From positions 21,204,001 through 21,268,000 of the forward strand of contig NC_092352.1 in the NCBI RefSeq assembly GCF_963676685.1: a stretch of 64,000 bases of DNA. The letters run 5' to 3'. Origin of the DNA: Mytilus edulis. Taxonomy: Eukaryota. The position numbers were made by a program, and so were the translations under genes. Shown one piece after another: positions 5,134-49,300 of the stretch; position 1 is the first letter of the stretch, and each line of letters opens with the position of its first letter. Below the pieces are notes generated by a model. That model was not told the origin of the DNA. It saw nothing but the letters and a program-made list of their open reading frames with translations, and did not search any database.

Positions 5134-5824
5134 GTTTTACAGAAAATTATGTAGGAAATATTTATGCTCTGTAACAATAGAATGACTTATTATACTGCAA
5201 CTGTGCTTATTGTGCAGTCAACATTCATTGAGCGTATAAATGTATGCTTTATGCAGTCACTAATTGTATAGTGCCTTGTTTGTGACAGTGATAATGTTTT
5301 TTGTGCTATGAAAAAATACAGATTTTTAGAATTTTTATGCAAATTCATAATTCTAATGGTTCCAAATATTTCATTTAGAACAGTTTTAAGTGTTGCATAA
5401 TAATTGAACAACCCATTTTTTTTTGTGTTCATTGCTCAAAACACGATAGAAATTTTCAGCAAAGCATAACTTCTACCTATTCCTAAGTCTTGTACAAATT
5501 AATTTCATAATTTGAGACAATATATAGTTATTTTATATCTATCACTACGTAAAAACATGATAATGGTATTTGAAGTTAATAAATATATACCTGTTTACCA
5601 TATGTTTTTATATTGGCAGCAACTGTTGGCAACCTTAGTCTTTTATATTTGGAATAATAAAAGTACAGTTTAGGTAACAGTACGTCCTAAAGATGAATGA
5701 ATTACTGTACAACAATTTTTTGTATGTTTGTATATTTAGTTTTCAGTTTTTTGTATTAATGGTTTATAACTGTTTTTGTGCATAATATAACTAATAACCA
5801 AAGATGAACACATGCATATGTTAA

Positions 5825-6195
5825 GGGAGTTCGCTTCTCAGTTTCAAAGTAATTAACTTTTCAAAAGATTAGTTTATATTCATAGGGGATTAATAAAGGA
5901 ATCCATAGAGCAAAAAAAATATAAAGGTCGCCATGCTCGTTTTCGATATATACGCCATTGAAATTTTGGCGGGAAAATATTCTCTTTTGACTTTTCATAG
6001 CTTTATTATTGACAAGTTAAAGTCTTCAAAAACTATTAAAAAGTAATTAACATTTTAAAAGACTTTAACAGACAGCTGAAAACTATACATGTAAAACAAT
6101 TATAAAAAGAAAAATTTGTTTATGCATTCCAATGGATAAAATCAGAGGATTCCGAAAATCTGAACAAAATTCTAAAACATGACAAGCCAGCTTCC
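5825..6195. mobile_element. Degenerate TTAA-flanked MITE (Kolobok-like)
   Basis: TTAA GGGAGTTCGCTTCTCA ... TGACAAGCCAGCTTCC TTAA; imperfect inverted termini. Confidence 0.5.
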
Positions 6196-7543
6196 TTAAA
6201 CCAAAGCTTATGTATTTATTGTTTCATTTTTTTTACAGTAAATACTTCGTATAATCTTATTAGAAACTGACAATTTATAACTATTTAAATGCACTTTGAA
6301 AATTGACTGTTCTGTTCTATATACCATTTAGGTAATAAAGATAACAAAGAGAAACTGAAAAAGGCCAGTGGTCGAAACTTCTTAAATTTAAAAACTACTG
6401 CAATAATTCATCTCAGACAATTGTCATTTGAACAAGACTTATGTGTGATATTTCAACTTTATAATAATGATTATAATTTTACTTCAAATCATTTAATCAG
6501 GACTGGATCAAATTTGAAATGAACTGACCAGATACATGTGAAATTGTTATTGTGTATGAATTTGTTGTGTTGTAATATGGAAAATGATTTAACATTCTTT
6601 GCTGTGAAAATGAAGGCAAGATTAACATACGGTAAACATATGAAACGAAAGATTCTGTTACCAAATTATCCCCCCTTCACACAATGTGTAATATCCTTTG
6701 ATGTTGTTTTTTTCTTTTATATTCATGTACTTGATTTAACATTCCACATGGTATATATATGGTACAAAGTATAATAAACATAAAATGCTACATTGCATCA
6801 TATGACAAAATTGGCAAAAATTTGTTCAATGGGAGATAACCCAAAGTTTGTTTTAAAACTGATGAGATCAAAAATGTCTTTTTTTCTCTCTCTGTATATA
6901 ATGTACTGATTAGTTAACTAATTGCTACACTATAAAATTTGTAATCCTGTCCTTAATTGGCCCTTTATTGGTTTAACAAACACGGTCCTGTATCATTTAA
7001 ACTAATTTATTCTCTACCCATTCTGATTTTGATCAAACTATAATTAAGACCAAGAATCTCAAACATAGCAAAAGTAAAGATATTAATGTAATGATACATG
7101 TTGAATGTCTAACAAAGTGAATTTGTGCATTTTCACTTTGTATGTCTTAATCAAGATTATCATACATAGCTAAACCATCAATCTGATACTGTTTTTTTAG
7201 GTTTGCAAACTTTTATATGATATGTTTATGTAAATAGGAAATATATATACCTGTATGTAGTATAAAAGTGATGCAGTTTCAATAAGATCTAATAAACGGA
7301 ACAATACAATCTCAGTTTGATTTGAAGGTAACAGGATTATGTTTGCTTTGCCACCTAATTTTATTAAATTTGAATATATACCATGTGTCAATATTTAATG
7401 TGATGTTGCTAGCTGAGCTGTGATATATTTTACAATAAACTCTCAGGAATTTATGTTTTGCTTAATTTGATTTGGTTCCCAGGAGTGGGCCTGTTTTGAG
7501 TGATCTACTTTTTGAATTTCCATTAAAATCCCTTATCTGTACA

Positions 7544-30922: not shown

Positions 30923-33900
30923 ATGGCAGACGAAGTTGAAGAGAAAGTAAACCCAGAGATAAATGAAGATGAAGCAATAGAACAGTTTCAAAATGGCCAG
31001 GTCTGTCGAGCGTTTAAATAACCAACAGAACATTGGACCTTTAATTAATGAGAGAGTAAAATCGTTTCTTCAGTCCCATATATAATAGGGATTTGAAATT
31101 TATTAGAAGCAACTGTTGAAGAATAAAAATAAATATTGATAGTTCAGTGATGTGCCAATTCAATGATTGATATGGACACAAATAGTTCATAACAAATTTT
31201 TAATTGTTGCGAAATATCGCATCAAACAATTTATGCTAAAAGTAAAATGTAACAGATTAAAATATTTCCAAACTCTGGTAAGCTAAAAAGGACAGATCAA
31301 ATCATCCTATTATTCTAAATAATTATGACATCTTGAAAGGCTATTTTATTTTTTTGCTTTTACTCCTTACAGTGGCATCAAAATGAAAAATAGAATACCC
31401 TTTTAGTACACCATAATTGTTTTGACTACCTTCCTATGACACAAATGTATCAGCTCCACAACAAACTTACAGAAGTTTTACAGAAATTTACAAGATAACT
31501 TGTCATGCCACATCTTCTTACCTAATTTATATTGATCCAAAAACTATTGCAGACTTTAGCTATTTCGAAAAGTCAATAGACTACAGACAAAGTGATGTAT
31601 TTTTTCATCTATTTATCATGTTTATTTTTTCTTTCTTATTTTTTTCAATTAATCTACTTCTCTGATTGGTAATTTGATTTAAAACTTAATGTAATATGCT
31701 AAATAACATTGCAATGAGATAAGAATTTAGATTTGTATACAGTTTAAAATTGAGATTGGAAATGGGGAATATGTCAATGAGACAACAACTCGACCAAAGA
31801 GCTGTATCTTTATTGAATTGATATAGATTTATTAGTCATAAAATAGCCATGATGAAGTAATAAACTTCTATTTAATCAATTATTTTTATAAGGAGCTTTT
31901 AATATTTACAAATGCAGCAACATTTATAAGAGTCAAAATTACTTTTATGTGAACTAATCTATAACATTTAATTAAGGGCAAGTCTTTCTTATTATACTTT
32001 GTCTGAGTTAACTCTATAGAAGATCAACATTGTCTAATGGCTCAGTCCAAGTTTACTTGGGCAAAGTTTTCTTTGCGATTGCAAATTAAATAAAATAAAG
32101 AACAGTTTCTATATTTCTGAAATATATAAAATGCATATACAATTTTATTTAACTTGGTTCTTACATGAATGTTGGTCAAATAGGGCCAGAGAAAATCTAA
32201 ATATAGATCAAACAGTCTCTAAATCATTACAAGACAGGCGTTGGCATGCCATTTGGTTAAGTATTTTGTTAATTCATGGTATGATATCTTTTCAGCTATC
32301 TTATATTGGACAAAATGAAGAATGCATTCCAACTTATCTTGCTGAAAAATATTCGTCTATTTCAAAAAGATTTGATCTGAGTTTTAACCAGTTGAAGTAA
32401 GTTTTTATTAAACAAATCAAGGACTTACATTAGGTACTTATATGTACTGGAAGAGAAAATAAATGTATTATTACCGGTAAAGTGCACTATTAAAGGTATT
32501 AAATTAAGAAAAATAACCGCTTGTACATTAAAGTACACCACAAATAACAAGCAGTTTCTTAAGGACATTGAATAATCTTTTCTTTATCTTTTTAGTGACA
32601 CCATTCAATGGGTATGACAGCTTCTCCCCCTCCCCCTTTTTCCTCCTCTGAGTCCTGCCAAGGGGAGATATGGTAAATATAGTCTCTGTCCATCAGTCTA
32701 TCTGTCTGAAACTCATAAATATTCATAGACGGTGACCATTTAACATAAAGCTTTCATACTTGGTTGGATTATTTGTCATCATATTCTCTTGACCATGCTA
32801 TGACCATTTTTATGCCCTATTTAGGGGCATTATGTTTTTCAGTCTGTGCATCTGTTCTTTTGTTTGTTCATCCGCCTCTTAGTCTTTTCGAACCAAAAAA
32901 AGAAACTGAGAACATTTACCTGAAATGAGGGATAATTGAAAGATGTACCAGTACACTCTAATGTCTTATAAATCATTGGTTATTTGAAACATAATATTAA
33001 TAATACAAATGTATATAAATCTTCATTTCAGGTCATTATCCGATTTAGAAAGATTTCAGAATTTAGAGGAACTGGTTCTTGATAACAACAGATTAAGTGA
33101 TGATGTAGTGTTTCCTCGTTTAAACCATCTTCACACACTCACACTAAACAAAAATTGTGTATCCTTTTCTCAATTATTGGGATTTTGTGTAGTGCTTATA
33201 TACAGATATTTGTATATATATATCAAACAAATTCTATGTCTCCTTTGTCATGGTTTATTCTATTAAGGTTTATGACCCCTTTCTGTCATATTTTTGCACA
33301 AATTTTTCAAACTTCAATCGTATCAAAACTACAGATATAATGAATAATAGAGATAGGCCATTTAGTACATATACCAAGGGGAAACTTGATGGAAAGCATA
33401 ATTTTTTACTGTTTCATTGCATTTACTAGAAAAAGAGTACTTTGTGGCAAATAAACCAAGATTTTTATAGAAATTCCAAAGCCTTTAATACAGAGATTTT
33501 TTATATAAAATTTGAAACATAGATTTCTAACTTCCTTTTCTATGATGTGCTAGTGTTTATTTTCTACAAAAAGTTCTAACTAACCTGTAAATACCAAAAT
33601 AACTAAAGTAACTAAAGTCGAGCGCACCGTAAAAGGTGTACTTGATTGGTCCATATTTTTATTTGTTTTAACCAATAACTACATTAATAAACTTGTTTTA
33701 AGGAAATCAATGCTAGCACTGCATGCAATAATCCTTTATCTATCAGTCATCAAATTGCTAAATATAAGAGTACAAGGATAAAGGCTGTGGATTTTCTATA
33801 AAATTTTCATTTGTTTAGCATTGAATCAACACACTTAGGGTACATTATCTTTATACACATTGTTCTGCCAAACATTTTTGTGGTCACATCATGTTATTCA

Positions 33901-36900
33901 CAAAACTGTCACAGATTCTTCTTCAGGGAATGAAGTTATGCACATGCTACTTAAATGATTTATTGAAAGATTTATTAGGGTTTCCCAAATACCCTAAATA
34001 GCCTATTATTTAGTTTTCCATTCAGTAATATTTCTTTATCAACCGCTAATGACTTGCCAATTCTGCTTACAAATGTTTGGAGAGGACAGAAAAAATGTGT
34101 TCAGAGGGTACTGATGTGATGAAAATGCTAAAACATTTTTAGTGTAAAGTGTAAACCTAGGTATAGCCCTTTTTTTCAGATGCATTTTGAATGTCCATTT
34201 AGCACAAACATTTGAAACAAATTCTGTTTATTTATTATAGTATGATCAATCAGTTATTTGCCGAAAGAGAGGTTCTCAAAGAGATCAATTTTATTTAAAG
34301 AAAAATACTTTTGTTATTTAATACTAAGTACTACTGAGTGATACTTGAATTGTACTCTACTACTCATTAACATAGAATAGAAAATTTTATCTAAGTCCGG
34401 TTACATGAAATATTACAAACATAAGCTTTAAAGCTTTTTGCCAACAACATTCCTATAATAAAGGCATTTGAATTCACTAAAATGCAATCTAGCAAAAAAA
34501 TATGTTTTATAGATATGACTGCCTAATGCTCCCCTTCTACAGTTGACTTTGTTGCTAATCCTTAACTAATTAATGGTTATGAGAAAAAGATTCATACTAG
34601 ATTACGCTTAGGGCTTAGTGCTCTTAATGACCACTTGTATAAATATAATCTTACATTAAATAGGTTTTGCGATTTCTGCCCAGGTAATCGTATTGAAAGC
34701 ACTGAGCACTATTTTATTCATTGTGCCCAATACACGAACTATCGGATCACTCTTCTACTTGAAATTAAGAATCTGCTTTGTCCAGATATAAATATAGCAA
34801 TGTTGCGGGATCTATGTCCCAACTATCTGAGCAAAATATTAATAGAAGGTAGTGATGATTTGTCTGATGTCAGATACTAATTTAGAGTTGTTTGAGTGTG
34901 TGTTTTGATTTATTAAATCTTCAAACAGATTTTCTCGATAAACTTATTTGTTCTTAACTTTTTCTCTTGTAATAAAACATATAAGGTTTGAAACACATAT
35001 TCCATTTGACCTGATTGTGCTCAAAATTGTCTTTCCATAATCACTATTCTATATTACTGAATCATACATGTGTGTTAAGTCGTGTGTATGTGAGTAAGAA
35101 TGAGCGAGTGATTGGATGGGTGTGTAGTCAAATTATATTTGTATGTCTTGTACTGTACATATTGTCTTGTCTTGTGTTTAACATGTTTGTATTCAAAACT
35201 TTGATAATTGTGAATCTGTATATATCTATGTTGAGGAGACCCACACGTAGCCTCTGGCTGTTGGCAATCCTCTTTAAATAAATAAAGAATTAAATTAATC
35301 CTTAACTGCTTCATCAGATAACAGATTTGTATCATTTGTTAGACAACCTTGCAGAAAATGTTCCATCATTAACCTATCTAAGTTTATTGGGGAACTTAGC
35401 ATGTCCAAACCAGTTATCTAGTCCAGACAATGATGAAGAAGATTACCAAAGATACAGGTAAAGTTGGTTTTTTTGTTTGCCACCTGAACTTTACACATAT
35501 ATAATGATGTTAAAAATGTCGGTTATGGTTTCACAGATTTTTGTAGACTCCAAGTCTAACAGTGTATGAATTTTGGTTGAATAATGCAGCAGTATTTTAA
35601 TTTCAAAATATACCTGTACCTCCCTTGGTAAAAGCTTGTATCTATAATTTCTTTGTAAAGACAACCAGTCTCATACAACTGCTTGAAATTGAAGTAAATG
35701 CAACTGTAAACAAAATGTCAATTATCTATCATCAATAAGGAGAGCTGATCAGAAAACTGAACATTTGACATTGAGATGCATACACTGGAAAAAAGCACTT
35801 ATCTCTTTTTTCATAAATAAAACTTATACTTTGTCCTGTAAATACATATATACAACCTGTACAAAGGTTTACCAATAAGATTTTCACTTATACTGACATG
35901 AAAAACTTTTAAATGCATCTTTATTGTTAAAATAGATGCAGAAATATTGATATAACCCAACTATTTTTGACACAATATATTGTCACTATTTTAGGTATTA
36001 TGTATTATATAAGTTACCAAAACTGAAGTTCTTAGACTCCACACCAGTCAAACAAGAGGAGTTACTCACAGCCAAAGAGAAAGGTGCTTTTATGAAAGTC
36101 ATCAAGGCAGAGGACAGTGAGGTAAAATTAAATGTTTAAAATGAAGTGTTTTCTCAGCATATCTCATTCTTTTTCTGCATTCAAATATAAAAATATAACT
36201 TCATATTGTGTGTGTACAGCAGATTTTTTTTTATCTCTTATTCAAAAACTGATAGTTTTTATTTATCACAGTATATTTGCTAGAGGTGAGAATCCATACC
36301 ACTCTAAAATCAAACAATATGACCTATTCTCAAAATGATGTCTTTATAAGTCACAACAAAAAACCATACCACATCAAAACTAGACAAAATAGTGAAAATA
36401 TTTATTACGCAGCCACCTAATAAACAAGGTTACACATGTAAGCACAATGATAATGACTGTACCAGTCACATCTGACTATTATTTTGTAATTCATTCAATA
36501 CCTTCCTTTTATCAACAGCTGATTTCTGACCCCAAAATATCACCTGAGACAGATGATTCAAATTACAGTCCACTTCCACAGTCTGCACGTAATGCCGATC
36601 AGCATTCAGGTTAGTATTGTATATTCCCTTTTGGTTGTGGCCTGTTATCTATTTTTTACATGAATAGATATTTCTCGTATCACACTACATGTAGTGTGAT
36701 ACGAAAAAGTGATACAAAAATCTGCTTTAATTGATTGGCTTATCGAGAATGACGAGACAATATTACAGCAATACCATTGGCTATTCATTAGGTCATTGAT
36801 GACTTTCAAAGGTTAAGATGATGTTTCCTCCATGGCATCATACATCTATGTGATTTCAATAATAATATACAACGTACTCACACTTTGCACCTGACAATCT

Positions 36901-37408
36901 TCTTTTTGTCAAATTGTATTACATTCTGAAGTGTACAAAAAGTCTTAAAATGTCTGATTTTAAAGATATATAGGAGCTTCTCACTCCTAGAACTCCTTAG
37001 ATCCCAAATGTACATAGTTTTAATTTGTAAATAATAACTACTGTAAATAGTTACTGCTGGTTTCAATAATGGAGGAGGAAAGGCCTTATGATTACACGAG
37101 CAAGAGTCATTATATACTTTAAGAGTCAGACACTGTATTGAAAGAAGAAGAAGAAAGTTGAACACTGGGAAAAGACATATAAAGTTAATTGTTTTTATCA
37201 ACAGTTGTTCTCTTTGGTTTAATTTACAAGCTTGTTTAGAAGCATTATATGTGTGCATTCTTAGTTAATTTAAAGTTATCAAAAAGATCAAAGCCATTTT
37301 ATGCAATACCTTTGTTTTCTTTTTACAGCTGCCTGGGGAAAAAGTAAATATGTTTACTATGGCAACCATTCAGAGGGAAACAGATTTATCAGAAACCCTG
37401 ACCTTTAA
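30923..37408 (+). CDS. LRMDA: Leucine-rich melanocyte differentiation-associated protein (C10orf11 orthologue), complete, 247 aa
   Basis: Seven exons: 30923-31000, 32296-32396, 33032-33158, 35318-35457, 35995-36121, 36519-36609, 37329-37408; phase-consistent (744 nt). [70 protein letters not shown] and C-terminal [19 protein letters not shown] match LRMDA. Confidence 0.95.
33159..35317 (+). other. U12-type (minor spliceosome) GT-AG intron of LRMDA
   Basis: Donor GTATCCTTTT; branch site TCCTTAAC at 35299-35306, ending 11 nt before the exon; no polypyrimidine tract. Confidence 0.93.
34568..35295 (+). mobile_element. 5'-truncated LINE (CR1/L2-like ORF2 C-terminus + 3'UTR + TAAA tail) with 12-bp TSD
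   Basis: [38 protein letters not shown] (C-terminal Cys/His motif) ... FIKSSNRF. Tail TAAATAAATAAAG. TSD TAATCCTTAACT at 34556-34567 and 35296-35307. Confidence 0.85.
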
Positions 37409-40400
37409 ATGACATTGACCTGTGAACACCATGACTTTGAAAGAAGGAATTAAGATAACATAAGATCTTCACGGTGCTAACCCAAGTGAAACTGATGAGT
37501 TGATATATTTTTATGTAAATGTTTTGTATGTTTGATGTGTACATGGATAAAATGTTATCTTAATTTTTTTCACTTACATACTCATACTCCCAACATATAC
37601 ACATTATGTACATTCTCACATAATCATTTATAATTATCGAAAATATGTTGAAACAGTATGAGATACCTGGCAGAAAAGGTAAAAAATTGATGTATGGATA
37701 TAAGAAATATAAAAAGCATTTTCATTCAAAAAATATATTTTTATGTTTAACCAAAAAAAAAACATAATATAATCTTTTATATAATACTGTATACTGTTTT
37801 TTTATGCTTCAAGATATTAATTATGTGCATTTTTGACATGTTTGTTAAATGTTTTAAGTGAATGTTTATACAATGTATTTACAATATATATATTTTTATA
37901 CAACTTTCTATAATAATTTGTGATAGTTACAAAAAGGGCATAATGCCATAAAATTGTCCTGATTACGGTATATAATGTTAACTACTTACTATGCAAAGCT
38001 ATATGAATATGTGCCATACAAATCAACATGTTATTAATTGTGGTGGGTCCCAGATTTTTAAAAAGGGGAGGCCAATAGGTGGATATCAAATTGTTTTTTT
38101 CAAAATGGACAGACCTAGACCTAGCTTGCTAAAATAAATTACAATTGGGTGTGCAATTTGAATGAATTGCAATAGGTGGAGATAAATTAACTCATCATAG
38201 ATAGCAACACTACCTATTTTTAAAAGTCACAGTAAATGTTTCCATATTTTATGTCAATGATATTCTATTTATCTTTTCAAACATTTGCTTATTGATGAAA
38301 TTTGATGTACAATGTACTGGTACTTAAATTGAAATAAAACAATTTTAATGTTAAATATTGTTTTCTGAAATTGAATTTCATGTAAAAATTATGTATACTT
38401 CTATGAAATAGTCCAAATACATAATAAATAATCAAACATTTAAAGTATTATTACTTTCTTTATTTTATGTTGGGTTTCAACATGAGTACTATAACAAATG
38501 AATATATGGTATGATTGCCAATGTTACAACTCTCCACAACAGACCAAATGACATAGGTCACTGTGCGGCCTTCAACAATGAGCACGAACTAATGTATACC
38601 ATGATGTACGTCTTCAGCATGAGTACTATAACAAATGAATATATGGTATGATTGCCAATGTGACAACTCTCCATAAGAGACCAAATGACATAGGTCACTG
38701 TGCGGCCTTTAACAATGAGCACTATGCATATGTTGATGTGTTTTAAGCATGAGTACTATGCATAGCTTGATATCTTTTTTAAGTATGAGTACTATGTAAA
38801 GGTTGATGCATGTTTTCAGCATGAGTACTATGTATACCATGATGTCTGTTTTCAACATGAGTACTATGTAAAGTTTGATGTCTGTTTTCAGCATGAGTAC
38901 TATGTATAGGATGAGGTCTGTTTTCAGTATGAGTACTACGCATAGGTTGATGTCTGTTTTCAGCATGAGTACTATGTATAGGATGAGGTCTGTTTTCAGC
39001 ATGAGTACTATGCATAGTTTGATGTCTGTTTTTAACATGAGTACTATATATACCATGATGTCTGTTTTCAGCATGAGTACTATGTATAGGATGATGTCTG
39101 TTTTCAGCATGAGTACTAGACATAGGTTGATGTCTGTTTTCAGCATGAGTACTATGTAAAGGATGATGTCTGTTTTCAGAATGAGTACTATGCATAGTTT
39201 GATGTCTGTTTTTAGTATGAGTACTATGCATAGTTTGATGTCTGTTTTCAGCATGAGTACTATGTATACCATGATGTCTGTTTTTAGCATGAGTACTATG
39301 TATACCATGATGTCTGTTTTTAGCATGAGTACTATGTATAGGATGGTGTCTGTTTTCAGCACGAGTAAAACAGACATCAGCATGAGTACTATGTAAAGGT
39401 TGATGTCAGTTTTTATCATGAGTACTATGTATAGGATGGTGTCTGTTTTCAGCATGAGTACTATGTATACCATGATGTCTGTTTTTAGCATGAGTACTAT
39501 GTATAGGATGGTGTCTGTTTTCAGCACGAGTAAAACAGACATCAGCATGAGTACTATGTATAGGTTGATGTCTGTTTTCAAAATGAGTACTATGTATACC
39601 ATGATGTCTGTTTTCAGCAAAAGTACTATGTATACCATGATGTCTGTTTTCAGCAAGAGTACTATGTATAGGTTGATGTCTGTTTTCAGCATGAGTACTA
39701 TGTATAGGTTGAGGTCTGTTTTCAGCATGAGTACTATGTATAGGATGAGGTCTGTTTTTAGCATGATAACTATGTATAGGATGAGGTCTGTTTTCAGCAT
39801 GAGTACTAGCATAGGTTGATGTCTGTTTTCAGCATGAGTACTATGCATAGTTTGATGTCTTTTTTCAGCATGAGTACTATAATAGGTTGATGTCTGTTTT
39901 CAGCATGAGTACTATGTATAGGATGAGATCTGTTTTCAGCATGAGTACTATGTATAGGATGATGTCTGTTTTAAGCATGAGTACTACGCATAGGTTGATG
40001 TCTGTTTTCAGCATTAGTACTATGTAAAGATGATGTCTGTTTTCAGCATGAGTACTATCAATAGGATGAGGTCTGTATTTATCATGAGTACTATGCATAG
40101 GTTGAGGTCTGTTTTCAGCATGAGTACTATGTAAAGGTTGGTGTCTGTTTTCAGCATGAGTACTATGTAAAGGTTGGTGTCTGTTTTCAGTATGAGTACT
40201 ATGTATACCATGATGTCTGTTTTCAGCATGAGTACTATGTATACCATGATGTCTGTTTTCAGCACGAGTACTATGTATAGGATTAGGTCTGTTTTTAACA
40301 TGAGTACATAGGATGATGTCTGTTTTTAGCATGAGTACTATGCATAGGTTGATGTCTTTTTTAAGTATGAGTAGTATGTAAAGGTTGATGTCTGTTTTCA

Positions 40401-43400
40401 ACATGAGTACTATGCATAGTTTGATGTGTTTTCAGCATGAGTACTATGCATAGATTGATATCTGTTTTAGTATTAGTACTATGTAAAGGTTGAGGTCTGT
40501 TTTCAACATGAGTACTATGTATCGGATGAGGTCTGTTTTCAACATGAGTACTATGTATAGGATGGTGTCTGTTTTCAGCATGGGTACAATACATAGGTTG
40601 ATGTCTGTTTTCAGCATGAGTACTATGTATACCATGATGTATGTTTTCAGCATGAGTACTAGACATAGGTTGATGTCTGTTTTCGATTTCTGTTTTCAGC
40701 ATGAGTAGTATACATAGTTTGGTGTATGTTTTCAGCATGAGTACTATGCATAAGATGCTGTCTGTTTTTAGTATGAGTACTATGCATAAGATGATGTCTG
40801 TTTTCAGCATGAGTACTATGTATAGGATGGTGTCTGTTTTCAGCATGAGTACTATGCATAGTTTGATGTATGTTTTTATCATGAGTACTATGTGTAGCTA
40901 TATAGGATGGTGTCTGTTTTCAGCATGAGTACCATGTAACGGATGAGGTCTGTTTTCAGCATGAGTACTATGCATAGGATGGTGTCTGTTTTTAGCATGA
41001 TTACTATGCATAGTTTGATGTATGTTTTCAGCATGAGTACTATGCATAGTTTGATGTATGTTTTTATCATGAGTACTATGTATAGGATGAGGTCTGTTTT
41101 CAGCATGAGTACTATGTATAGGATGAGGTCTGTTTTCAGCATGAGTACTATGTATAGGATGAGGTCTTTTTTCAGCATGAGTACTATGTATAGGTTGGTG
41201 TCTGTTTTCAGCATGAGTACTATGTAAAGATGATGTCTGTTTTCAGCATGAGTACTATCAATAGGATGAGGTCTGTATTTATCATGAGTTCTATGCATAG
41301 GTTGAGGTCTGTTTTCAGCATGAGTACTAACATAGGTTGATGTCTGTTTTCAGCATGAGTACTATGCATAGTTTGATGTCTTTTTTCAGCATGAGTACTA
41401 TAATAGGTTGATGTCTGTTTTCAGCATGAGTACTATGTATAGGATGAGATCTGTTTTCAGCATGAGTACTATGTATAGGATGATGTCTGTTTTAAGCATG
41501 AGTACTATGCATAGGTTGATGTCTGTTTTCAGCATGAGTACTATGTAAAGATGATGTCTGTTTTCAGCATGAGTACTATCAATAGGATGAGGTCTGTATT
41601 TATCATGAGTACTATGCATAGGTTGAGGTCTGTTTTCAGCATGAGTACTATGTAAAGGTTGGTGTCTGTTTTCAGCATGAGTACTATGTAAAGGTTGGTG
41701 TCTGTTTTCAGTATGAGTACTATGTATACCATGATGTCTGTTTTCAGCATGAGTACTATGTATACCATGATGTCTGTTTTCAGCACGAGTACTATGTATA
41801 GGATTAGGTCTGTTTTTAACATGAGTACATAGGATGATGTCTGTTTTTAGCATGAGTACTATGCATAGGTTGATGTCTTTTTTAAGTATGAGTAGTATGT
41901 AAAGGTTGATGTCTGTTTTCAACATGAGTACTATGCATAGTTTGATGTGTTTTCAGCATGAGTACTATGCATAGATTGATATCTGTTTTAGTATTAGTAC
42001 TATGTAAAGGTTGAGGTCTGTTTTCAACATGAGTACTATGTATCGGATGAGGTCTGTTTTCAACATGAGTCCTATGTATAGGATGGTGTCTGTTTTTAGC
42101 ATGGGTACAATACATAGGTTGATGTCTGTTTTCAGCATGAGTACTATGTATACCATGATGTATGTTTTCAGCATGAGTACTAGACATAGGTTGATGTCTG
42201 TTTTCGATTTCTGTTTTCAGCATGAGTAGTATACATAGTTTGGTGTATGTTTTCAGCATGAGTACTATGCATAAGATGCTGTCTGTTTTTAGTATGAGTA
42301 CTATGCATAAGATGATGTCTGTTTTCAGCATGAGTACTATGTATAGGATGGTGTCTGTTTTCAGCATGAGTACTATGCATAGTTTGATGTATGTTTTTAT
42401 CATGAGTACTATGTGTAGCTATATAGGATGGTGTCTGTTTTCAGCATGAGTACCATGTAACGGATGAGGTCTGTTTTCAGCATGAGTACTATGCATAGGA
42501 TGGTGTCTGTTTTTAGCATGATTACTATGCATAGTTTGATGTATGTTTTCAGCATGAGTACTATGCATAGTTTGATGTATGTTTTTATCATGAGTACTAT
42601 GTATAGGATGAGGTCTGTTTTCAGCATGAGTACTATGTATAGGATGAGGTCTGTTTTCAGCATTAGTACTATGTATAGGATGAGGTCTTTTTTCAGCATG
42701 AGTACTATGTATAGGTTGGTGTCTGTTTTCAGCATGAGTACTATGTATAGGTTGATGTCTGTTTTCAGCATGAGTACTATCAATAGGATGAGGTCTGTAT
42801 TTATCATGAGTACTATGCATAGGTTGAGGTCTGTTTTCAGCATGAGTACTAGCATAGGTTGATGTCTGTTTTCAGCATGAGTACTATGCATAGTTTGATG
42901 TCTTTTTTCAGCATGAGTACTATAATAGGTTGATGTCTGTTTTCAGCATGAGTACTATGTATAGGATGAGATCTGTTTTCAGCATGAGTACTATGTATAG
43001 GATGATGTCTGTTTTAAGCATGAGTACTATGCATAGGTTGATGTCTGTTTTCAGCATGAGTACTATGTAAAGATGATGTCTGTTTTCAGCATGAGTACTA
43101 TCAATAGAATGAGGTCTGTATTTATCATGAGTACTATGCATAGGTTGACGTCTGTTTTCAGCATGAGTACTATGTAAAGGTTGGTGTCTGTTTTCAGCAT
43201 GAGTACTATGTAAAGGTTGGTGTCTGTTTTCAGTATGAGTACTATGTATACCATGATGTCTGTTTTCAGCATGAGTACTATGTATACCATGATGTCTGTT
43301 TTCAGCACGAGTACTATGTATAGGATTGAGTAGTATGTAAAGGTTGATGTCTGTTTTCAACATGAGTACTATGCATAGTTTGATGTGTTTTCAGCATGAG

Positions 43401-44519
43401 TACTATGCATAGATTGATATCTGTTTTAGTATTAGTACTATGTAAAGGTTGAGGTCTGTTTTCAACATGAGTACTATGTATCGGATGAGGTCTGTTTTCA
43501 ACATGAGTACTATGTATAGGATGGTGTCTGTTTTCAGCATGGGTACAATACATAGGTTGATGTCTGTTTTCAGCATGAGTACTATGTATACCATGATGTA
43601 TGTTTTCAGCATGAGTACTAGACATAGGTTGATGTCTGTTTTCGATTTCTGTTTTCAGCATGAGTAGTATACATAGTTTGGTGTATGTTTTCAGCATGAG
43701 TACTATGCATAAGATGCTGTCTGTTTTTAGTATGAGTACTATGCATAAGATGATGTCTGTTTTCAGCATGAGTACTATGTATAGGATGGTGTCTGTTTTC
43801 AGCATGAGTACTATGCATAGTTTGATGTATGTTTTTATCATGAGTACTATGTGTAGCTATATAGGATGGTGTCTGTTTTCAGCATGAGTACCATGTAACG
43901 GATGAGGTCTGTTTTCAGCATGAGTACTATGCATAGGATGGTGTCTGTTTTTAGCATGATTACTATGCATAGTTTGATGTATGTTTTCAGCATGAGTACT
44001 ATGCATAGTTTGATGTATGTTTTTATCATGAGTACTATGTATAGGATGAGGTCTGTTTTCAGCATGAGTACTATGTATAGGATGAGGTCTGTTTTCAGCA
44101 TGAGTACTATGTATAGGATGAGGTCTTTTTTCAGCATGAGTACTATGTATAGGTTGGTGTCTGTTTTCAGCATGAGTACTATGTATAGGTTGATGTCTGT
44201 TTTCAGCATGAGTACTATGTATAGTTTGATGTATGTTTTCAGCATGAGTACTATGTGTAGCTATATAGGTTGATGTATGTTTTCTGCATGAGTACTATGT
44301 AAAGGATGAGGTCTGTTTCAACATCAGTACTATGTATAGGATGAGGTCTGTTTTCAACATGAGTACTATGTATAGGATAAGGTCTGTTCTAGCATGAATA
44401 CTAGAAATAGTTTGATGTATGTTGTCAGAATGTAGCTAAGTATGGGTTGATGTGTTTTCTGCATGAGTAATATGTATACCATAATGCATGTTTTCAGAAT
44501 GTGTACTATGTATACTTCA

Positions 44520-44785
44520 GGCGCCTGTAATCCAGTGGTTGTCGTTTGTTAATGTGTTAAATATTTGTTTTTTGTTCATTTTTTTATATAAATAAGGTCC
44601 TTAGTTTTCTCGTTTGAATTGTTTTACATTGTAATATCGTGCCTTTTATAGCTGACTATGCCGTATGGGCTTTGCTCATTGTTAAAGGCTGCACGGTGAC
44701 CTATAGTTGTTAATGTCTGTGTCATTTTGGTCTCTTGTGGACAGATGTCGCATTGGCAATCCTACCACATCTTTTTTTTTATATT
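44520..44785 (+). mobile_element. Retroelement-tail fragment embedded in the satellite (copy 1)
   Basis: GCCTGTAATCCAGTGGTTGTCGTTTG...CCACATCTTTTTTTTTATAT, homologous to 13757-14017. Confidence 0.75.
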
Positions 44786-46092
44786 TGTTGTCTGTTTTCA
44801 GTCCCTTTTCAGCATGAGTACTATGCATAGTTTGATGTATGTTGTCAGTATGAGTACAAGGCATAGTTTGATGTATGTTTTTAACATGAGTACTATGTAT
44901 AGGATGAGGTCTGTTTTCAGCATGAGTACTATGTTTAGGATGAGGTCTGTTTTCAGCATGAGTTCTATGTATACCATGATGTCTGTTTTCAGCACGAGTA
45001 CTATGTATAGGATGAGGTCTGTTTTTAACATGAGTACATTGGATGAGGTCTGTTTTTAGCATGAGTACTATGTATAGTTTGATGTATGTTTTCAGCATGA
45101 GTACTAAGCATAGTTTGATGTATATTTTCAGCATTAGTACTATGTATACCATTATGTCTATTTCAGAATGAGTACTATGCATAGGTTGATGTTTGCTTTC
45201 AGCATGAGTACTATGCATAGTTTGATGTGTTTTAAGCATGAGTACTATGCATAGGTTAAGGTATGTTTTCAGCATGAGTTCTTTGCATAGTTTGATGTGT
45301 TTTCAGCATGAGAACTATGCATAGATTGATGTCTGTTTTAGTATTAGTACTATGTAAAGGTTGAGGTCTGTTTTCAACATGAGTACTATGTATAGGATGG
45401 TGTCTGTTTTCAGCATGAGTACAATACATAGGTTGATGTCTGTTTTCAGCATGACTACTATGTATACCATGATGTATGTTTTCAGCATGAGTACAAGACA
45501 TAGGTTGATGTTTGTTTTCGATGTCTGTTTTCAGCATGAGTACTATGCATAGTTTGATGTATGTTTTTATCATGAGTACTATGTATAGGATGGTGTCTGT
45601 TTTCAGCATGAGTACCATGTATAGGATGAGGTCTGTTTTCAGCATGAATACTATGTATAGGATGAGGTCTGTTTTCAGCATGAGTACTATGTATAGTTTG
45701 AGGTCTGTTTTCAGCATGAGTACTATGCAAAGGATGAGATCTTTTTTCAGCATGAGTACTATGTATAGGTTGATGTATGTTTTCTGCATGAGTACTATGT
45801 AAAGGATGAAGTCTGTTTCAACATGAGTACTATGTATAGGATGAGGTCTGTTTTCAACATGTGTACTATGTATAGGATGAGGTCTGTTTTCAGCATGAGT
45901 ACTATGTATAGGTTGAGGTCTGTTTTCAACATGAGTACTATGTATAGGATGGTGTCTGTTTTCAGCATGAGTACTAGAAATAGGTTGATGTATGTTGTCA
46001 GAATGTAACTATGTATGGGTTGATGTGTTTTCTGCATGAGTAATATGTATACCATAATGCATGTTTTCCGCATGTGTACTATGTATACTTCG

Positions 46093-46358
46093 GGCGCCTG
46101 TAATCCAGTGGTTGTCGTTTGTTAATGTGTTAAATATTTGTTTTTTGTTCATTTTTTTATATAAATAAGGTCCTTAGTTTTCTCGTTTGAATTGTTTTAC
46201 ATTGTAATATCAGGCTTTTTATAGCTGACTATGCCGTATGGGCTTTGCTCATTGTTAAAGGCTGCACGGTGACCTATAGTTGTTAATGTCTGTGTCATTT
46301 TGGTCTCTTGTGGACAGTTGTCTCATTGGCAATCCTACCACATCTTTTTTTTTATATT
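46093..46358 (+). mobile_element. Retroelement-tail fragment embedded in the satellite (copy 2, duplicated with flanks)
   Basis: Near-identical to 44520-44785 at a 1573-bp offset, including the flanking satellite variants. Confidence 0.75.
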
Positions 46359-49300
46359 TGTTGTCTGTTTTCAGTCCCTATTCAGCATGAGTACTATGCA
46401 TAGTTTGATGTATGTTGTCAGTATGAGTACAAGGCATAGCTTGATGTATGTTTTTAACATGAGTACTATGTATAGGATGAGGTCTGTTTTCAGCATGAGT
46501 ACTATGTTTAGGATGAGGTCTGTTTTCAGCATGAGGTCTGTTTTCAGCATGAGTACTATGTATACCATGATGTCTGTTTTCAGCACGAGTACTATGTATA
46601 GGATGAGGTCTGTTTTTAACATGAGTACATAGGATGAGATCTGTTTTTAGCATGAGTACTATGTATAGGATGAGGTCTGTTTTTAGCATGAGTATTATGT
46701 ATAGGATGAGGTCTGTTTTTATCATGAGTACTATGTATGCGATAGTGTCTGTTTTCAGCATGAGTACTATGCATAGTTTGATGTTTGTTTTTAACATGAG
46801 TACTATGTATACCATGATGTCTGTTTTCAGCATGAGTACTATGTATACCATGATGTCTGTTTTCAACATGAGTACTATGTATAGGATGAGGTCTGTTTTC
46901 AGCATGAGTACTATGTATAGAATGAGGTCTGTTTTTAGCATGAGTATTATGTATAGGATGAGGTCTGTTTTTATCATGAGTACTATGTATGCGATAGTGT
47001 CTGTTTTCAGCATGAGTACTATGCATAGTTTGATGTCTGTTTTTAACATGAGTACTATGTATACCATGATGTCTGTTTTCAGCATGAGTACTATGCATAG
47101 TTTGATGCATGTTTTCAACATGAGTACTATGCATAGTTTGGTGTCTGTTTTCAGCATGAGTACTATGCATAGTTTGATGCATGTTTTCAACATGAGTACT
47201 ATGTATAGGATGGTGTCTGTTTTCAGCATGAGTACTATGTATATTTTGATGTCTGTTTTCAGCATGAGTACTATGCATAGTTTGATGCATGTTTTCAGTA
47301 TGAGTACTATGTATAGTTTGATGCATGTTTTCAGTATGAGTACTATGCATAGTTTGATGCATGTTTTCAGCATGAGTACTATGCATAGTTTGATGCATGT
47401 TTTCAGCATGAGTACTATGTATAGTTTGATGCATGTTTTTAGCATGAGTACTATGCATAGTTTGATGCATGTTTTTAGTATGAGTACTATGTATAGTTTG
47501 ATGCATGTTTTAGCATGAGTACTATGCATAGTTTGATGCATGTTTTTAGCATGAGTACTATGTATACCATGATGTCTGTTTTCAACATGAGTACTAGACA
47601 TAGGTTGATGTCAGTTTTTAGCATTAGTACTAGGCATAGGTTGATTTCTGTTTTTAGTATGAGTACATAATGTACTATGTTAATGTTTTCAGCAAGATTC
47701 ATTTCTGTACAGTGTGTAGGGAATAACAACTGCACTAATTATTCAAGTATATTATAAAAGTCATCATCTAAAAATAATGGATATAGAAAAACATCTCCAA
47801 ACAATTATCTTTCAAATGATCTGTGATTGTCAGGATCTTGGCAAGTCTTTCATGCTATGAAGAGCTCTTTTATACATGATGATTGCTTGAAACTTTTGTT
47901 GTATTTTTCTCAGTTATTACAAACCAGACCTTCTTGATTTTGCATACCATATATGCTTTAAAGCTATACTGTGTAAAACTTATTCATTTCTGTTTGCTGC
48001 ATACATTTACATGTGACGTCACTGTACCCAAATTACATGGATTACCCAATTTGCAAAAAAAAGGTTGAAAAATTGTTATTGGTTTTCTTAAAAGAGTCTA
48101 AACCACTAGTATTTTAATAATTTTGCCATTATGCACACATTCAGCATAGCTATTGAGGAACCAAATGAAAATTTTCCACAGAATCACTTTCCCTTGGTCA
48201 AGTTCACAGTTACCATTGTATGAACACAATAGCTATTGTTCTCTCTGGAGTTTATTCAATTGGAAATGTAAATTTCTTCTTGATAAATAGACTTAAGCAG
48301 AACAAAAACTTAACTGTTGAAGAGGGTATGTTGGATAGGGACAAAAAAATGGCATTTCAACAGGCCACTGACAGTACTCTCAATAGTTGTTGCAAGGGTT
48401 GTTAAACTGTAGATAGCCTGACTCACTGACTTATCAAAGTATCAGATTTAGCACTCTTTACATTTTTATTGAAGTCAACTGGATGCTTATGAAAAGACTA
48501 TGAACACCAATCAAGACTTTTTGCTACTAAATCAAAAAGCCATGTATTTTTTCAGACACTGTGGTCAGTATAGCCTCATTTTACTATTTGTATGCCCTGC
48601 CACTTCTAATTGACCCATTTTTACAGAATTACAACAGTTTGAATATGTTGAACGCAGGAAAGTTGAGAATTTCAAATATCCTAGAGCGGGTGATTATATA
48701 AAAACTGCGAAATATAATTTTATATTAAACTGGGACAAATAAACAATTGTCGACCACTAGTTGTTTTGAATTAGGTTTCTTTTGTCTTTGGTTGCTATGT
48801 TATTGACATTTAACCCACATCTTTTTTCAATAAAGTGAATATTTGTCTACCTATTTTGACTTCAAGAAAAGAAAACAATTCAGAACTAGATGTTGTATGA
48901 TATTCAGCAACAAACAACAACCACTGAATTATAGACTCCTGACTTTAGACAGGCACATATGGAATGTGGCAGGGTTAAACAAGATATATGAATAAGCTAT
49001 AAACACTACTTACAACAAAATAAACATGAATTAATGTATCCTATGCAGGAGAATAACAACTAAGTGTGTGACAATAATGATTTATTTTCGACATTGAATT
49101 ACATTTTCTAATTATTGATATAAAGACTACTTTGGCAGTGCTCAACACATTAAAATGAAGATCTAAAGCTTCTTAAACTGTCAAAAAATTTTGTATACAC
49201 ATAAATTATCAAGAACTATTGAAATATATTTATCATAACAAGAAAACAAAAAAATATACATAAAACATCTGAATATGAAAAATGTAGAAGCAAAACAAGC

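What the first reader, a model, noticed from the sequence alone, without database searches (positions are those of the whole stretch)
34556..35317. LINE inserted into a U12 branch point, and its target-site duplication regenerated the branch point
Seen: a 728-bp 5'-truncated LINE (34568-35295, sense to LRMDA) is flanked by the 12-bp direct repeat TAATCCTTAACT (34556-34567, 35296-35307). This repeat contains the complete U12 branch consensus TCCTTAAC. Deleting the LINE and one repeat gives ...GTTGCTAATCCTTAACTGCTTCATCAG, a normal U12 3' end. The intron now has two identical branch sites. The upstream copy is followed by an AG 16-17 nt later, inside the LINE (..GGTTATGAG|AAAAAG). The LINE tail places AATAAA just before the true branch site. 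Inference: a potentially gene-killing insertion was neutralised by its own TSD. It also created a candidate alternative U12 3' splice site and a LINE-derived terminal exon with poly(A) signal, which is a route for duplicating minor-intron signals.
Basis: partly seen in the sequence, partly recalled or inferred. Interest (0 to 1): 0.82.

Follow-up and report, generated by a model that had tools for sequence, protein, structure and literature searches.

The report
LINE insertion duplicated a U12 branch site
A truncated LINE landed next to the branch site of a rare minor-type (U12) intron in a mollusc leucine-rich-repeat gene, its 12-bp target-site duplication left an intact branch site beside the acceptor, and RNA shows only the original splice, so this is a tidy but mechanistically ordinary event.

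Summary
TAATCCTTAACT occurs exactly twice in the window (34556-34567, 35296-35307). It flanks a 5'-truncated LINE lying in sense inside a GT-AG U12-type intron (33159-35317).

More than 25 other genomic copies of the LINE family all end in ...GAATTAAATTAA followed by unrelated flanks. TCCTTAAC is therefore target DNA, not LINE. Only the first 3 nt (TAA) of the repeat are ambiguous with the LINE tail.

Boundaries need a small correction. LINE homology is 34573-35298. AATTA (34568-34572) is extra sequence at the 5' junction.

An RNA contig and two raw reads join 33158 to 35318 exactly. No junction into the LINE was seen, and RNA depth on the LINE at this locus was zero. The proposed alternative acceptor and LINE-derived terminal exon are therefore unsupported. 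That acceptor is also weak: GAG, 18 nt from the branch A, against CAG at 12 nt.

DNA contigs from two organism labels carry both junctions. No empty allele was found. The RNA comes from a third label whose insertion status I could not check.

Keeping a motif that lies inside a target-site duplication is an automatic result of staggered-nick insertion. This is a neat natural experiment, not a new mechanism.

The parts
33032..33158 (+). Exon upstream of the U12-type intron. It encodes leucine-rich repeats (...[10 protein letters not shown]) and ends in phase 0.
   Evidence: RNA contig X15 record 9 covers 33032-33158, with joints 32396->33032 and 33158->35318. Pfam LRR_4 scores E 6.5e-5, below the gathering cut-off.
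33159..35317 (+). GT-AG U12-type intron of 2159 nt. It would be 1419 nt without the insertion and one repeat copy.
   Evidence: The joint 33158->35318 'skips 2159, GT..AG' appears in one RNA contig and 2 raw reads. The motifs were read.
33159..33167 (+). U12-type 5' splice site GTATCCTTT.
   Evidence: This is the only GTATCCTT in the 64 kb window. It lies exactly at the RNA-supported donor.
34556..34567 (+). Upstream (5') copy of the target-site duplication TAATCCTTAACT. It carries an apparently unused duplicate branch motif TCCTTAAC (34559-34566).
   Evidence: DNA contigs of organisms A and B run 33781-34602 across this junction. No RNA joint ends downstream of it.
34568..34572 (+). Five extra nucleotides (AATTA) at the LINE 5' junction. 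They belong neither to the TSD nor to the family sequence at this position.
   Evidence: Every other copy reads ...CACGAGGAC before ATGGTTATGAG. Copy L026 likewise has 4 extra nt between its TSD and the LINE.
34573..35298 (+). 5'-truncated LINE fragment in sense to the gene. The ORF2 C-terminus with a CCHC zinc knuckle runs 34573-34880. The 3' UTR runs 34881-35298 and ends ...GAATTAAATTAA.
   Evidence: Other genomic copies match at 85-94% identity from window 34573 to about 35298. There is a weak zf-RVT hit. The full-length relative L039 encodes Exo_endo_phos + RVT_1.
35277..35286 (+). Two overlapping AATAAA hexamers in the LINE tail, 13-22 nt upstream of the functional branch motif.
   Evidence: No RNA 3' ends or RNA depth were seen here.
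35296..35307 (+). Downstream (3') copy of the TSD. It carries the branch motif that sits at working distance from the acceptor: TCCTTAAC at 35299-35306, branch A at 35305. The first 3 nt (TAA) are ambiguous with the LINE tail.
   Evidence: The branch A is 12 nt from the acceptor used in RNA. DNA contigs of A and B start at 35269 and cross into the exon.
35316..35317 (+). 3' splice site AG, in a CAG context.
   Evidence: The RNA joint ends at 35318.
35318..35457 (+). Downstream exon ([33 protein letters not shown]...).
   Evidence: RNA contig X15 record 9 covers 35318-35455. The joint 35455->35993 (cut +2) places the exon end at 35457.

Best explanation
A non-LTR retrotransposon (a LINE with an APE endonuclease and reverse transcriptase) inserted by target-primed reverse transcription into the 3' end of a pre-existing U12-type intron of a leucine-rich-repeat gene.

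Inferred steps:
- The first (bottom-strand) nick fell opposite 34555/34556. That is 22 nt upstream of the acceptor and 3 nt upstream of the branch motif.
- The TAA there could pair with the LINE RNA's ...AUUAA end.
- Reverse transcription stopped early, leaving a 726-bp 3' fragment plus 5 extra nucleotides.
- The second (top-strand) nick fell 12 nt downstream, after ...TCCTTAACT.
- Fill-in duplicated those 12 bp.

Because the whole branch motif lay between the two nicks, an intact copy stayed at its original 12-nt distance from the CAG acceptor. A second copy was stranded 740 bp upstream.

The minor spliceosome still uses the downstream branch site and the original acceptor. The upstream copy is most likely silent. 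Its nearest AG is a GAG at 18 nt, outside the 11-13 nt optimum, and no exon with a downstream donor follows it.

Shown: the repeat, the LINE boundaries, the splice junction, and the presence of the insertion in two organism labels. Inferred: the nick positions, U12 dependence of the splicing, and silence of the upstream copy below the detection limit.
For: - The 12-mer occurs exactly twice in the window and sits flush with the LINE.
- At least 43 matches to the LINE exist in the genome. About 25 aligned copies share the 3' end ...GAATTAAATTAA and then have unrelated flanks. None carries TCCTTAAC.
- A genome-wide pattern for LINE tail plus TCCTTAAC hits only this locus.
- Other truncated family members have TSDs of similar size: L026 12-13 bp plus 4 extra nt, L023 10 bp, L020 about 8 bp.
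- The family is a genuine LINE. L039 has a 1182-aa open frame with Exo_endo_phos and RVT_1.
- The intron has GTATCCTTT at the donor and TCCTTAAC 12 nt from a CAG. The published optimum is 11-13 nt (PMC3584512).
- The genome holds at least 4 U12 snRNA genes above Rfam's cut-off. The L040 copy carries the GTAAGGA box complementary to TCCTTAAC.
- RNA joins 33158 to 35318 in one 1374-nt transcript contig and 2 stranded raw reads. Five consecutive introns of the gene are confirmed in total.
- DNA contigs of organisms A and B cross the 5' junction (33781-34602). They reach 27-30 nt into the LINE at the 3' junction (35269 onward).
Against: - No empty allele or orthologous empty site was found, so the pre-insertion sequence is inferred only. 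The assembly has one copy of the 3' flank. No contig skips the insertion in X1 or X2. A degenerate pattern found nothing in metagenome contigs.
- The RNA runs are labelled organism C, while the DNA runs I laid were A and B. That the RNA-producing allele carries the LINE is therefore likely but not shown. C's DNA runs hold 0.54-0.60 of the stretch's words, similar to A and B.
- RNA depth is low: 2 junction reads.
- The 3'-junction contigs have fewer than 31 nt on the LINE side.
- U12 dependence rests on motifs, not on an experiment.
Confidence: 0.88

Rival explanations
1. The upstream duplicate branch site is functional. U12 pairs with 34559-34566 and the intron is spliced to the AG at 34583 (or 34589). 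This gives an isoform whose last exon is LINE-derived. It would be in frame with the ORF2 C-terminal 98 codons, stop at 34878-34880, and be polyadenylated after the AATAAA at 35277/35281.
For: - The motif is identical to the one at the working acceptor.
- An AG lies 18 nt downstream, and the frame from 34584 is open for 98 codons in phase with exon end 33158.
- AATAAA hexamers are present.
- U12 acceptor choice is reported to be error-prone (PMC3584512).
Against: - No joint 33158->34584 or 34590 appears in raw reads or RNA contigs.
- Raw-read depth is zero across 34576-35311, while most exon bins have 2-4.6.
- The only RNA contig touching the LINE comes from another copy. It has 14 mismatches, and its loose end at 34573 continues into family sequence.
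- The AG is in a GAG context at 18 nt, outside the 11-13 nt optimum.
- No donor-defined exon follows it.
Confidence: 0.07
2. The 12-bp repeat is not a target-site duplication. It would be either part of the LINE's own ends or a chance match, and the branch site was simply never touched.
For: The first 3 nt (TAA) do match the family's terminal ...TTAA. In 3 of 6 other truncated copies that I examined, no clear TSD was found.
Against: - The nine bases TCCTTAACT follow the LINE end in no other copy.
- The upstream copy lies in unique intron DNA, contiguous in single-copy contigs (records 3 and 14).
Confidence: 0.03
3. The intron is removed by the major (U2) spliceosome, and the U12-like motifs are coincidental. 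The duplicated 'branch site' would then have no special meaning.
For: The termini are GT-AG, which both spliceosomes accept.
Against: - GTATCCTTT and TCCTTAAC are each essentially unique in 64 kb. They sit exactly at the donor and 12 nt from the acceptor.
- There is no pyrimidine tract before the CAG.
- The genome encodes U12 snRNA with the matching box.
Confidence: 0.03

Closest known systems
Ordinary intronic LINE insertion by target-primed reverse transcription (5' truncation, 3' end intact, variable TSD, microhomology at the 3' junction, extra nucleotides at the 5' junction)
   Same: All of these hallmarks are present. The fragment is the 3' 726 bp of a family with APE + RT. It is flanked by a 9-12 bp TSD whose first 3 nt match the LINE tail, with 5 extra nt at the 5' junction. 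Other family members show 8-13 bp TSDs.
   Different: The staggered nicks happened to bracket the 8-nt branch motif of a U12-type intron. The duplication therefore produced a second, identical minor-spliceosome signal and left only 22 nt of original intron next to the acceptor.
Introners: transposons whose target-site duplication supplies a splice site (Gozashti et al. 2022, PMC9860276)
   Same: A TSD provides a working splicing signal beside an inserted element. That paper describes families that 'co-opt' the 5' or 3' splice site from the TSD.
   Different: Introners are mostly DNA transposons with 3-9 bp TSDs. They create new U2-type introns in exons and do so family-wide. Here a single LINE copy entered an existing U12 intron, the signal is a branch site, and nothing new is created in the mRNA.
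U12-type (minor) introns as defined in Turunen et al. 2013 (PMC3584512)
   Same: Donor GTATCCTTT. Branch TCCTTAAC 12 nt from the acceptor, within the 11-13 nt optimum. No pyrimidine tract. GT-AG subtype.
   Different: It carries two identical branch motifs 740 nt apart, and the upstream context of the working one is a LINE tail with AATAAA signals.

Membership tests
U12-type (minor spliceosome) intron | Extended 5' splice site /RTATCCTT | tested here: met
   GTATCCTTT at 33159-33167. It is the only GTATCCTT in the window and lies at the RNA-supported donor.
U12-type (minor spliceosome) intron | Branch motif TCCTTAAC about 10-20 nt (optimum 11-13) upstream of the acceptor, without a pyrimidine tract | tested here: met
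   TCCTTAAC at 35299-35306, with the branch A 12 nt from CAG 35315-35317. The optimum is taken from PMC3584512.
U12-type (minor spliceosome) intron | The intron is removed in vivo at these boundaries | tested here: met
   The joint 33158->35318 appears in RNA contig X15 record 9 and in 2 raw reads of X23. Caveat: the RNA is from organism label C.
U12-type (minor spliceosome) intron | The organism has minor-spliceosome snRNAs able to pair with the motif | tested here: met
   Four U12 (RF00007) matches at 103-121 bits, against a cut-off of 53. The L040 copy contains GTAAGGA. U11, U4atac and U6atac were not searched.
U12-type (minor spliceosome) intron | Splicing depends on U12/U6atac | not testable with these tools
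   This needs knock-down or lariat mapping.
Non-LTR retrotransposon (LINE) insertion by TPRT | Homology to a multi-copy family that encodes an endonuclease and a reverse transcriptase | tested here: met
   43 matches in the genome. L039 has an open frame of 1182 aa with Exo_endo_phos (E 3.9e-13) and RVT_1 (E 8e-31).
Non-LTR retrotransposon (LINE) insertion by TPRT | Common 3' end and variable 5' truncation | tested here: met
   The copies share ...GAATTAAATTAA. The window copy begins at a point where the other copies continue upstream.
Non-LTR retrotransposon (LINE) insertion by TPRT | Flanking target-site duplication that is not part of the element | tested here: met
   TAATCCTTAACT lies on both sides. 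Nine of its 12 nt are absent from every other copy's flank.
Non-LTR retrotransposon (LINE) insertion by TPRT | An empty site with a single copy of the TSD in another allele or species | tested here: inconclusive
   There is no second copy of the flank in the assembly. No skipping contig was seen in X1 or X2. Nothing was found in metagenome contigs.
   Only exon-wise checks were done. Exon 33033-33158 scores LRR_4 below the cut-off, and exon 35318-35457 has no Pfam hit. The atlas gave generic LRR neighbours under 0.9. The resemblance of [31 protein letters not shown] and YVYYG..SEGNRFI to human LRMDA is my recollection.

The most novel reading that the evidence does not exclude
The stranded upstream branch site is used at a low level or in particular tissues. 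This would give an LRR-protein/LINE-ORF2-tail chimera ending at the LINE's poly(A) signal. More generally, TSDs spanning the 8-nt U12 branch motif would be a recurrent way in which minor introns gain alternative acceptors or decoy branch sites. That would bear on why alternative splicing of U12 introns is so rare.
Probability: 0.07. Interest if true: 0.6.

Novelty: new member of a known kind. Interest (0 to 1): 0.3.

Why it matters
- It is a clean natural experiment on the minimal 3' requirements of a U12-type intron. Everything upstream of position -22 was replaced by an A/T-rich LINE tail carrying two AATAAA signals. The RNA seen (from organism label C, not confirmed to carry the LINE) shows only the original junction. 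This fits the view that the branch motif, its 12-nt spacing and the AG are sufficient.
- It places an identical decoy branch site, transcribed first, 740 nt upstream with no sign of use. This illustrates how strictly distance and acceptor context restrict minor-spliceosome choice.
- It does not reveal a new mechanism. A motif that lies wholly inside a TSD is always preserved.
- Among all LINE insertions in a 1.4-Gb genome with hundreds of U12 introns, about one such hit is expected by chance. This is my rough estimate, not a computed result.

Tried and rejected
- **Haplotig or empty allele in the assembly.** The 3' flank (35296-36100) is single-copy. The 5' flank only picked up an unrelated SINE-like repeat of about 150 nt.
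- **L029/L030.** The match reached query position 780, beyond the LINE end, and looked like a second copy of the junction. It is a gapped chance extension (…attaaattaaacatcatcagat) with no TCCTTAAC.
- **Literature.** There are no papers joining LRMDA or C10orf11 with minor or U12 introns; the C10orf11 hits are irrelevant albinism papers. There are none on a TSD regenerating a U12 branch point.
- **Orthologous site.** A degenerate pattern (branch motif plus the first codons of the exon) found nothing in metagenome contigs.
- **Gene naming.** The protein atlas on exon 35318-35455 gave only generic LRR neighbours below 0.9.
- **Background 12-mer count.** The empirical count of repeated 12-mers in the window (1653 pairs) is dominated by transposon copies and was not used.
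  - The joined (spliced) protein model was not built or searched.
  - The hypothetical empty-site sequence has no reference and was not searched as such.
  - The large protein search was not spent on naming the host gene.
  - No LINE consensus was built.

Full report

Direct reading of 34400-35500 and 33000-33300 and a script confirm every sequence statement.

- TAATCCTTAACT lies at 34556-34567 and 35296-35307. It occurs nowhere else in the 64-kb window on either strand.
- The 8-mer TCCTTAAC occurs only inside these two copies.
- GTATCCTT occurs once, at 33159.
- The repeat finder reports the pair as its top direct repeat, with a spacing of 740.
- With the window's composition (68% A+T) a 12-mer match has probability 2.6e-7 per register. 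Allowing a few dozen registers around the two junctions, chance is about 1e-5.

**2. What is the inserted DNA?**

A search of the window's own 1.37-Gb genome with 34540-35330 gave 43 matches. I aligned the ends of about 27 of them.

- All begin matching at window 34573 (ATGGTTATGAG...). In the other copies this is preceded by the shared sequence ...TTCACGAGGAC, so the window copy is 5'-truncated there.
- AATTA (34568-34572) belongs neither to the family nor to the repeat. It is extra sequence at the 5' junction.
- At the 3' side the copies share ...CCTCTTTAAATAAATAAAGAATTAAATTAA and then diverge into unrelated flanks. In the window that end is 35298.
- Only TAA (35296-35298) of the 12-mer can be read as LINE. 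TCCTTAACT cannot.
- A genome-wide pattern for LINE tail followed within 8 nt by TCCTTAAC hits only this locus.

The family is a genuine LINE. One full-length relative (L039) has an open frame of 1182 codons with Exo_endo_phos and RVT_1 domains. The window fragment encodes the C-terminal CCHC knuckle, with a weak zf-RVT hit.

The family is small. Only 21 exact tails of 25 nt exist in the genome. It includes a young subfamily whose copies are 98-100% alike. The window copy is 93-94% identical to its nearest relatives and 88% to the young subfamily. This suggests an insertion that is not recent. I did not determine the LINE clade and built no consensus.

Other truncated members show comparable TSDs:

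| Copy | TSD | Note |
|---|---|---|
| L026 | 12-13 bp | plus 4 extra nt |
| L023 | 10 bp | |
| L020 | about 8 bp | |
| three further copies | no clear TSD | |

**3. What is the host feature?**

RNA was laid on 32000-37500. A 1374-nt transcript contig (X15, record 9) and stranded raw reads (X23) define these exons:

- 32293-32396
- 33032-33158
- 35318-35457
- 35993-36119/36121
- 36517-36606
- 37326 onward

An upstream exon near 30990 is indicated by a loose end.

The joint 33158->35318 (skips 2159, GT..AG) is in the contig and in 2 raw reads. The intron has GTATCCTTT at its donor. TCCTTAAC has its second A 12 nt from the terminal CAG, within the 11-13 nt optimum given for U12-type introns (PMC3584512). 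There is no pyrimidine tract.

The genome has at least four U12 snRNA genes above Rfam's threshold. The best one carries GTAAGGA, the complement of TCCTTAAC with one bulged A. I therefore accept the U12-type assignment. Actual dependence on the minor spliceosome is inferred, not shown.

The exons encode leucine-rich repeats. The name LRMDA rests on remembered similarity to the human protein and was not tested. The spliced protein was not joined or searched.

**4. How it most likely happened and works**

The anatomy is textbook target-primed reverse transcription.

- A first nick fell just upstream of TAAT, with 3 nt of possible pairing to the LINE RNA's ...UUAA end.
- The cDNA was 5'-truncated.
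- A few extra nucleotides were added at the 5' junction.
- A second nick fell 12 nt downstream, and fill-in created the TSD.

The branch motif lay wholly between the nicks, so both copies are complete. The downstream copy kept its native 12-nt spacing to the acceptor.

In functional terms the LINE sits 3 nt upstream of the branch motif and leaves 22 nt of native intron. The phrase 'neutralised by its own TSD' is accurate. It also describes an automatic property of staggered-cut insertion.

**5. Is the upstream copy used?**

There is no evidence that it is.

- No joint from 33158 to 34584 or 34590 appears.
- Raw-read depth is zero in all four bins from 34576 to 35311, while most exon bins of the gene have 2-4.6.
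- The unique intron between 33840 and 34391 is also at zero, so there is no marked intron retention.
- The only RNA contig touching the LINE has 14 mismatches and continues upstream into family sequence. It comes from another copy.

The sequence itself argues against use. The first AG after the upstream motif is GAG at 18 nt and the next is AAG at 24 nt. No exon with a donor follows.

If it were used, the frame from 34584 would be open for 98 codons of LINE ORF2 tail, and AATAAA at 35277/35281 could end the transcript. That remains hypothetical. With so few reads I can exclude only usage above roughly a fifth to a quarter of the canonical form.

**6. Distribution and caveats**

DNA contigs of organism labels A (X1, no mismatches, probably the assembly's species) and B (X2) run 33781-34602 across the 5' junction. 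They start at 35269 at the 3' junction. Both labels therefore carry the insertion. The 3' contigs have under 31 nt on the LINE side because assembly breaks in the repeat.

No contig skips the insertion. The assembly has no second copy of the flank. A degenerate pattern found no orthologue in metagenome contigs. The empty site therefore remains unseen.

One caveat matters. Both RNA runs are labelled organism C, whose DNA I could not lay. C's DNA runs hold 0.54-0.60 of the sampled words of 33000-35500, about the same as A and B at 0.55-0.70. The LINE is 29% of that stretch. Presence in C is therefore likely but not demonstrated.

**7. Comparison with what is known, and verdict**

The event is a standard LINE insertion. 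The nearest conceptual precedent for a TSD supplying a splicing signal is the Introner literature, where 5' or 3' splice sites are co-opted from TSDs (PMC9860276). Those are mostly DNA transposons that create new U2-type introns.

I found no paper describing a TSD that duplicates a U12 branch site. I also found none that lists this gene among minor-intron genes.

The finding is a correct and tidy observation with a correct main inference. Its more exciting part, an alternative minor acceptor and a LINE-derived terminal exon, is not supported. Its value is as a natural experiment on the minimal 3' end of U12 introns and on indifference to a decoy branch site. Interest is about 0.3.

Noticed in passing
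window 38715-47666: A satellite array of about 9 kb with a 36-bp unit (also scored at periods 72 and 108), 76-86% matches. It lies just downstream of the gene. It produces long spurious ORFs on both strands.
   Followed up: partly
window 33288-33860 and 32736-32919: Further repeats lie inside and just before the same U12 intron. A SINE/MITE-like unit of about 150 nt at 33700-33860 has over 1300 first-look candidates genome-wide at 90-96% identity. DNA word depth there is in the tens of thousands.
   Followed up: partly
L039 (G000:C4:77204900-77213000), 3986-7531: A full-length member of the LINE family has an uninterrupted 1182-codon ORF2 (Exo_endo_phos + RVT_1) and a possible 340-codon ORF1 at 2391-3410. 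Sister copies are 98-100% identical, so the family may still be active despite its low copy number.
   Followed up: partly
window 35318-35324: A second CAG ends at 35324, 7 nt inside the downstream exon and 19 nt from the branch A. It would shift the frame. It is not used in the RNA examined.
   Followed up: yes
L040-L042 (G000:C10:81471007-81471155; C3:29716479-29716627; C3:29715299-29715447; C3:53888227-53888373): At least four U12 snRNA genes, two of them about 1.2 kb apart on C3. All score 103-121 bits against RF00007.
   Followed up: partly
window 34940-35005: The young LINE subfamily lacks 64 nt present in the window copy and has about 14-16 other letters there. This appears as a 'skips 64' joint in high-depth DNA and RNA contigs that come from other copies. 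It is a subfamily marker, not a variant of this locus.
   Followed up: partly
I did not examine it.
   Followed up: no
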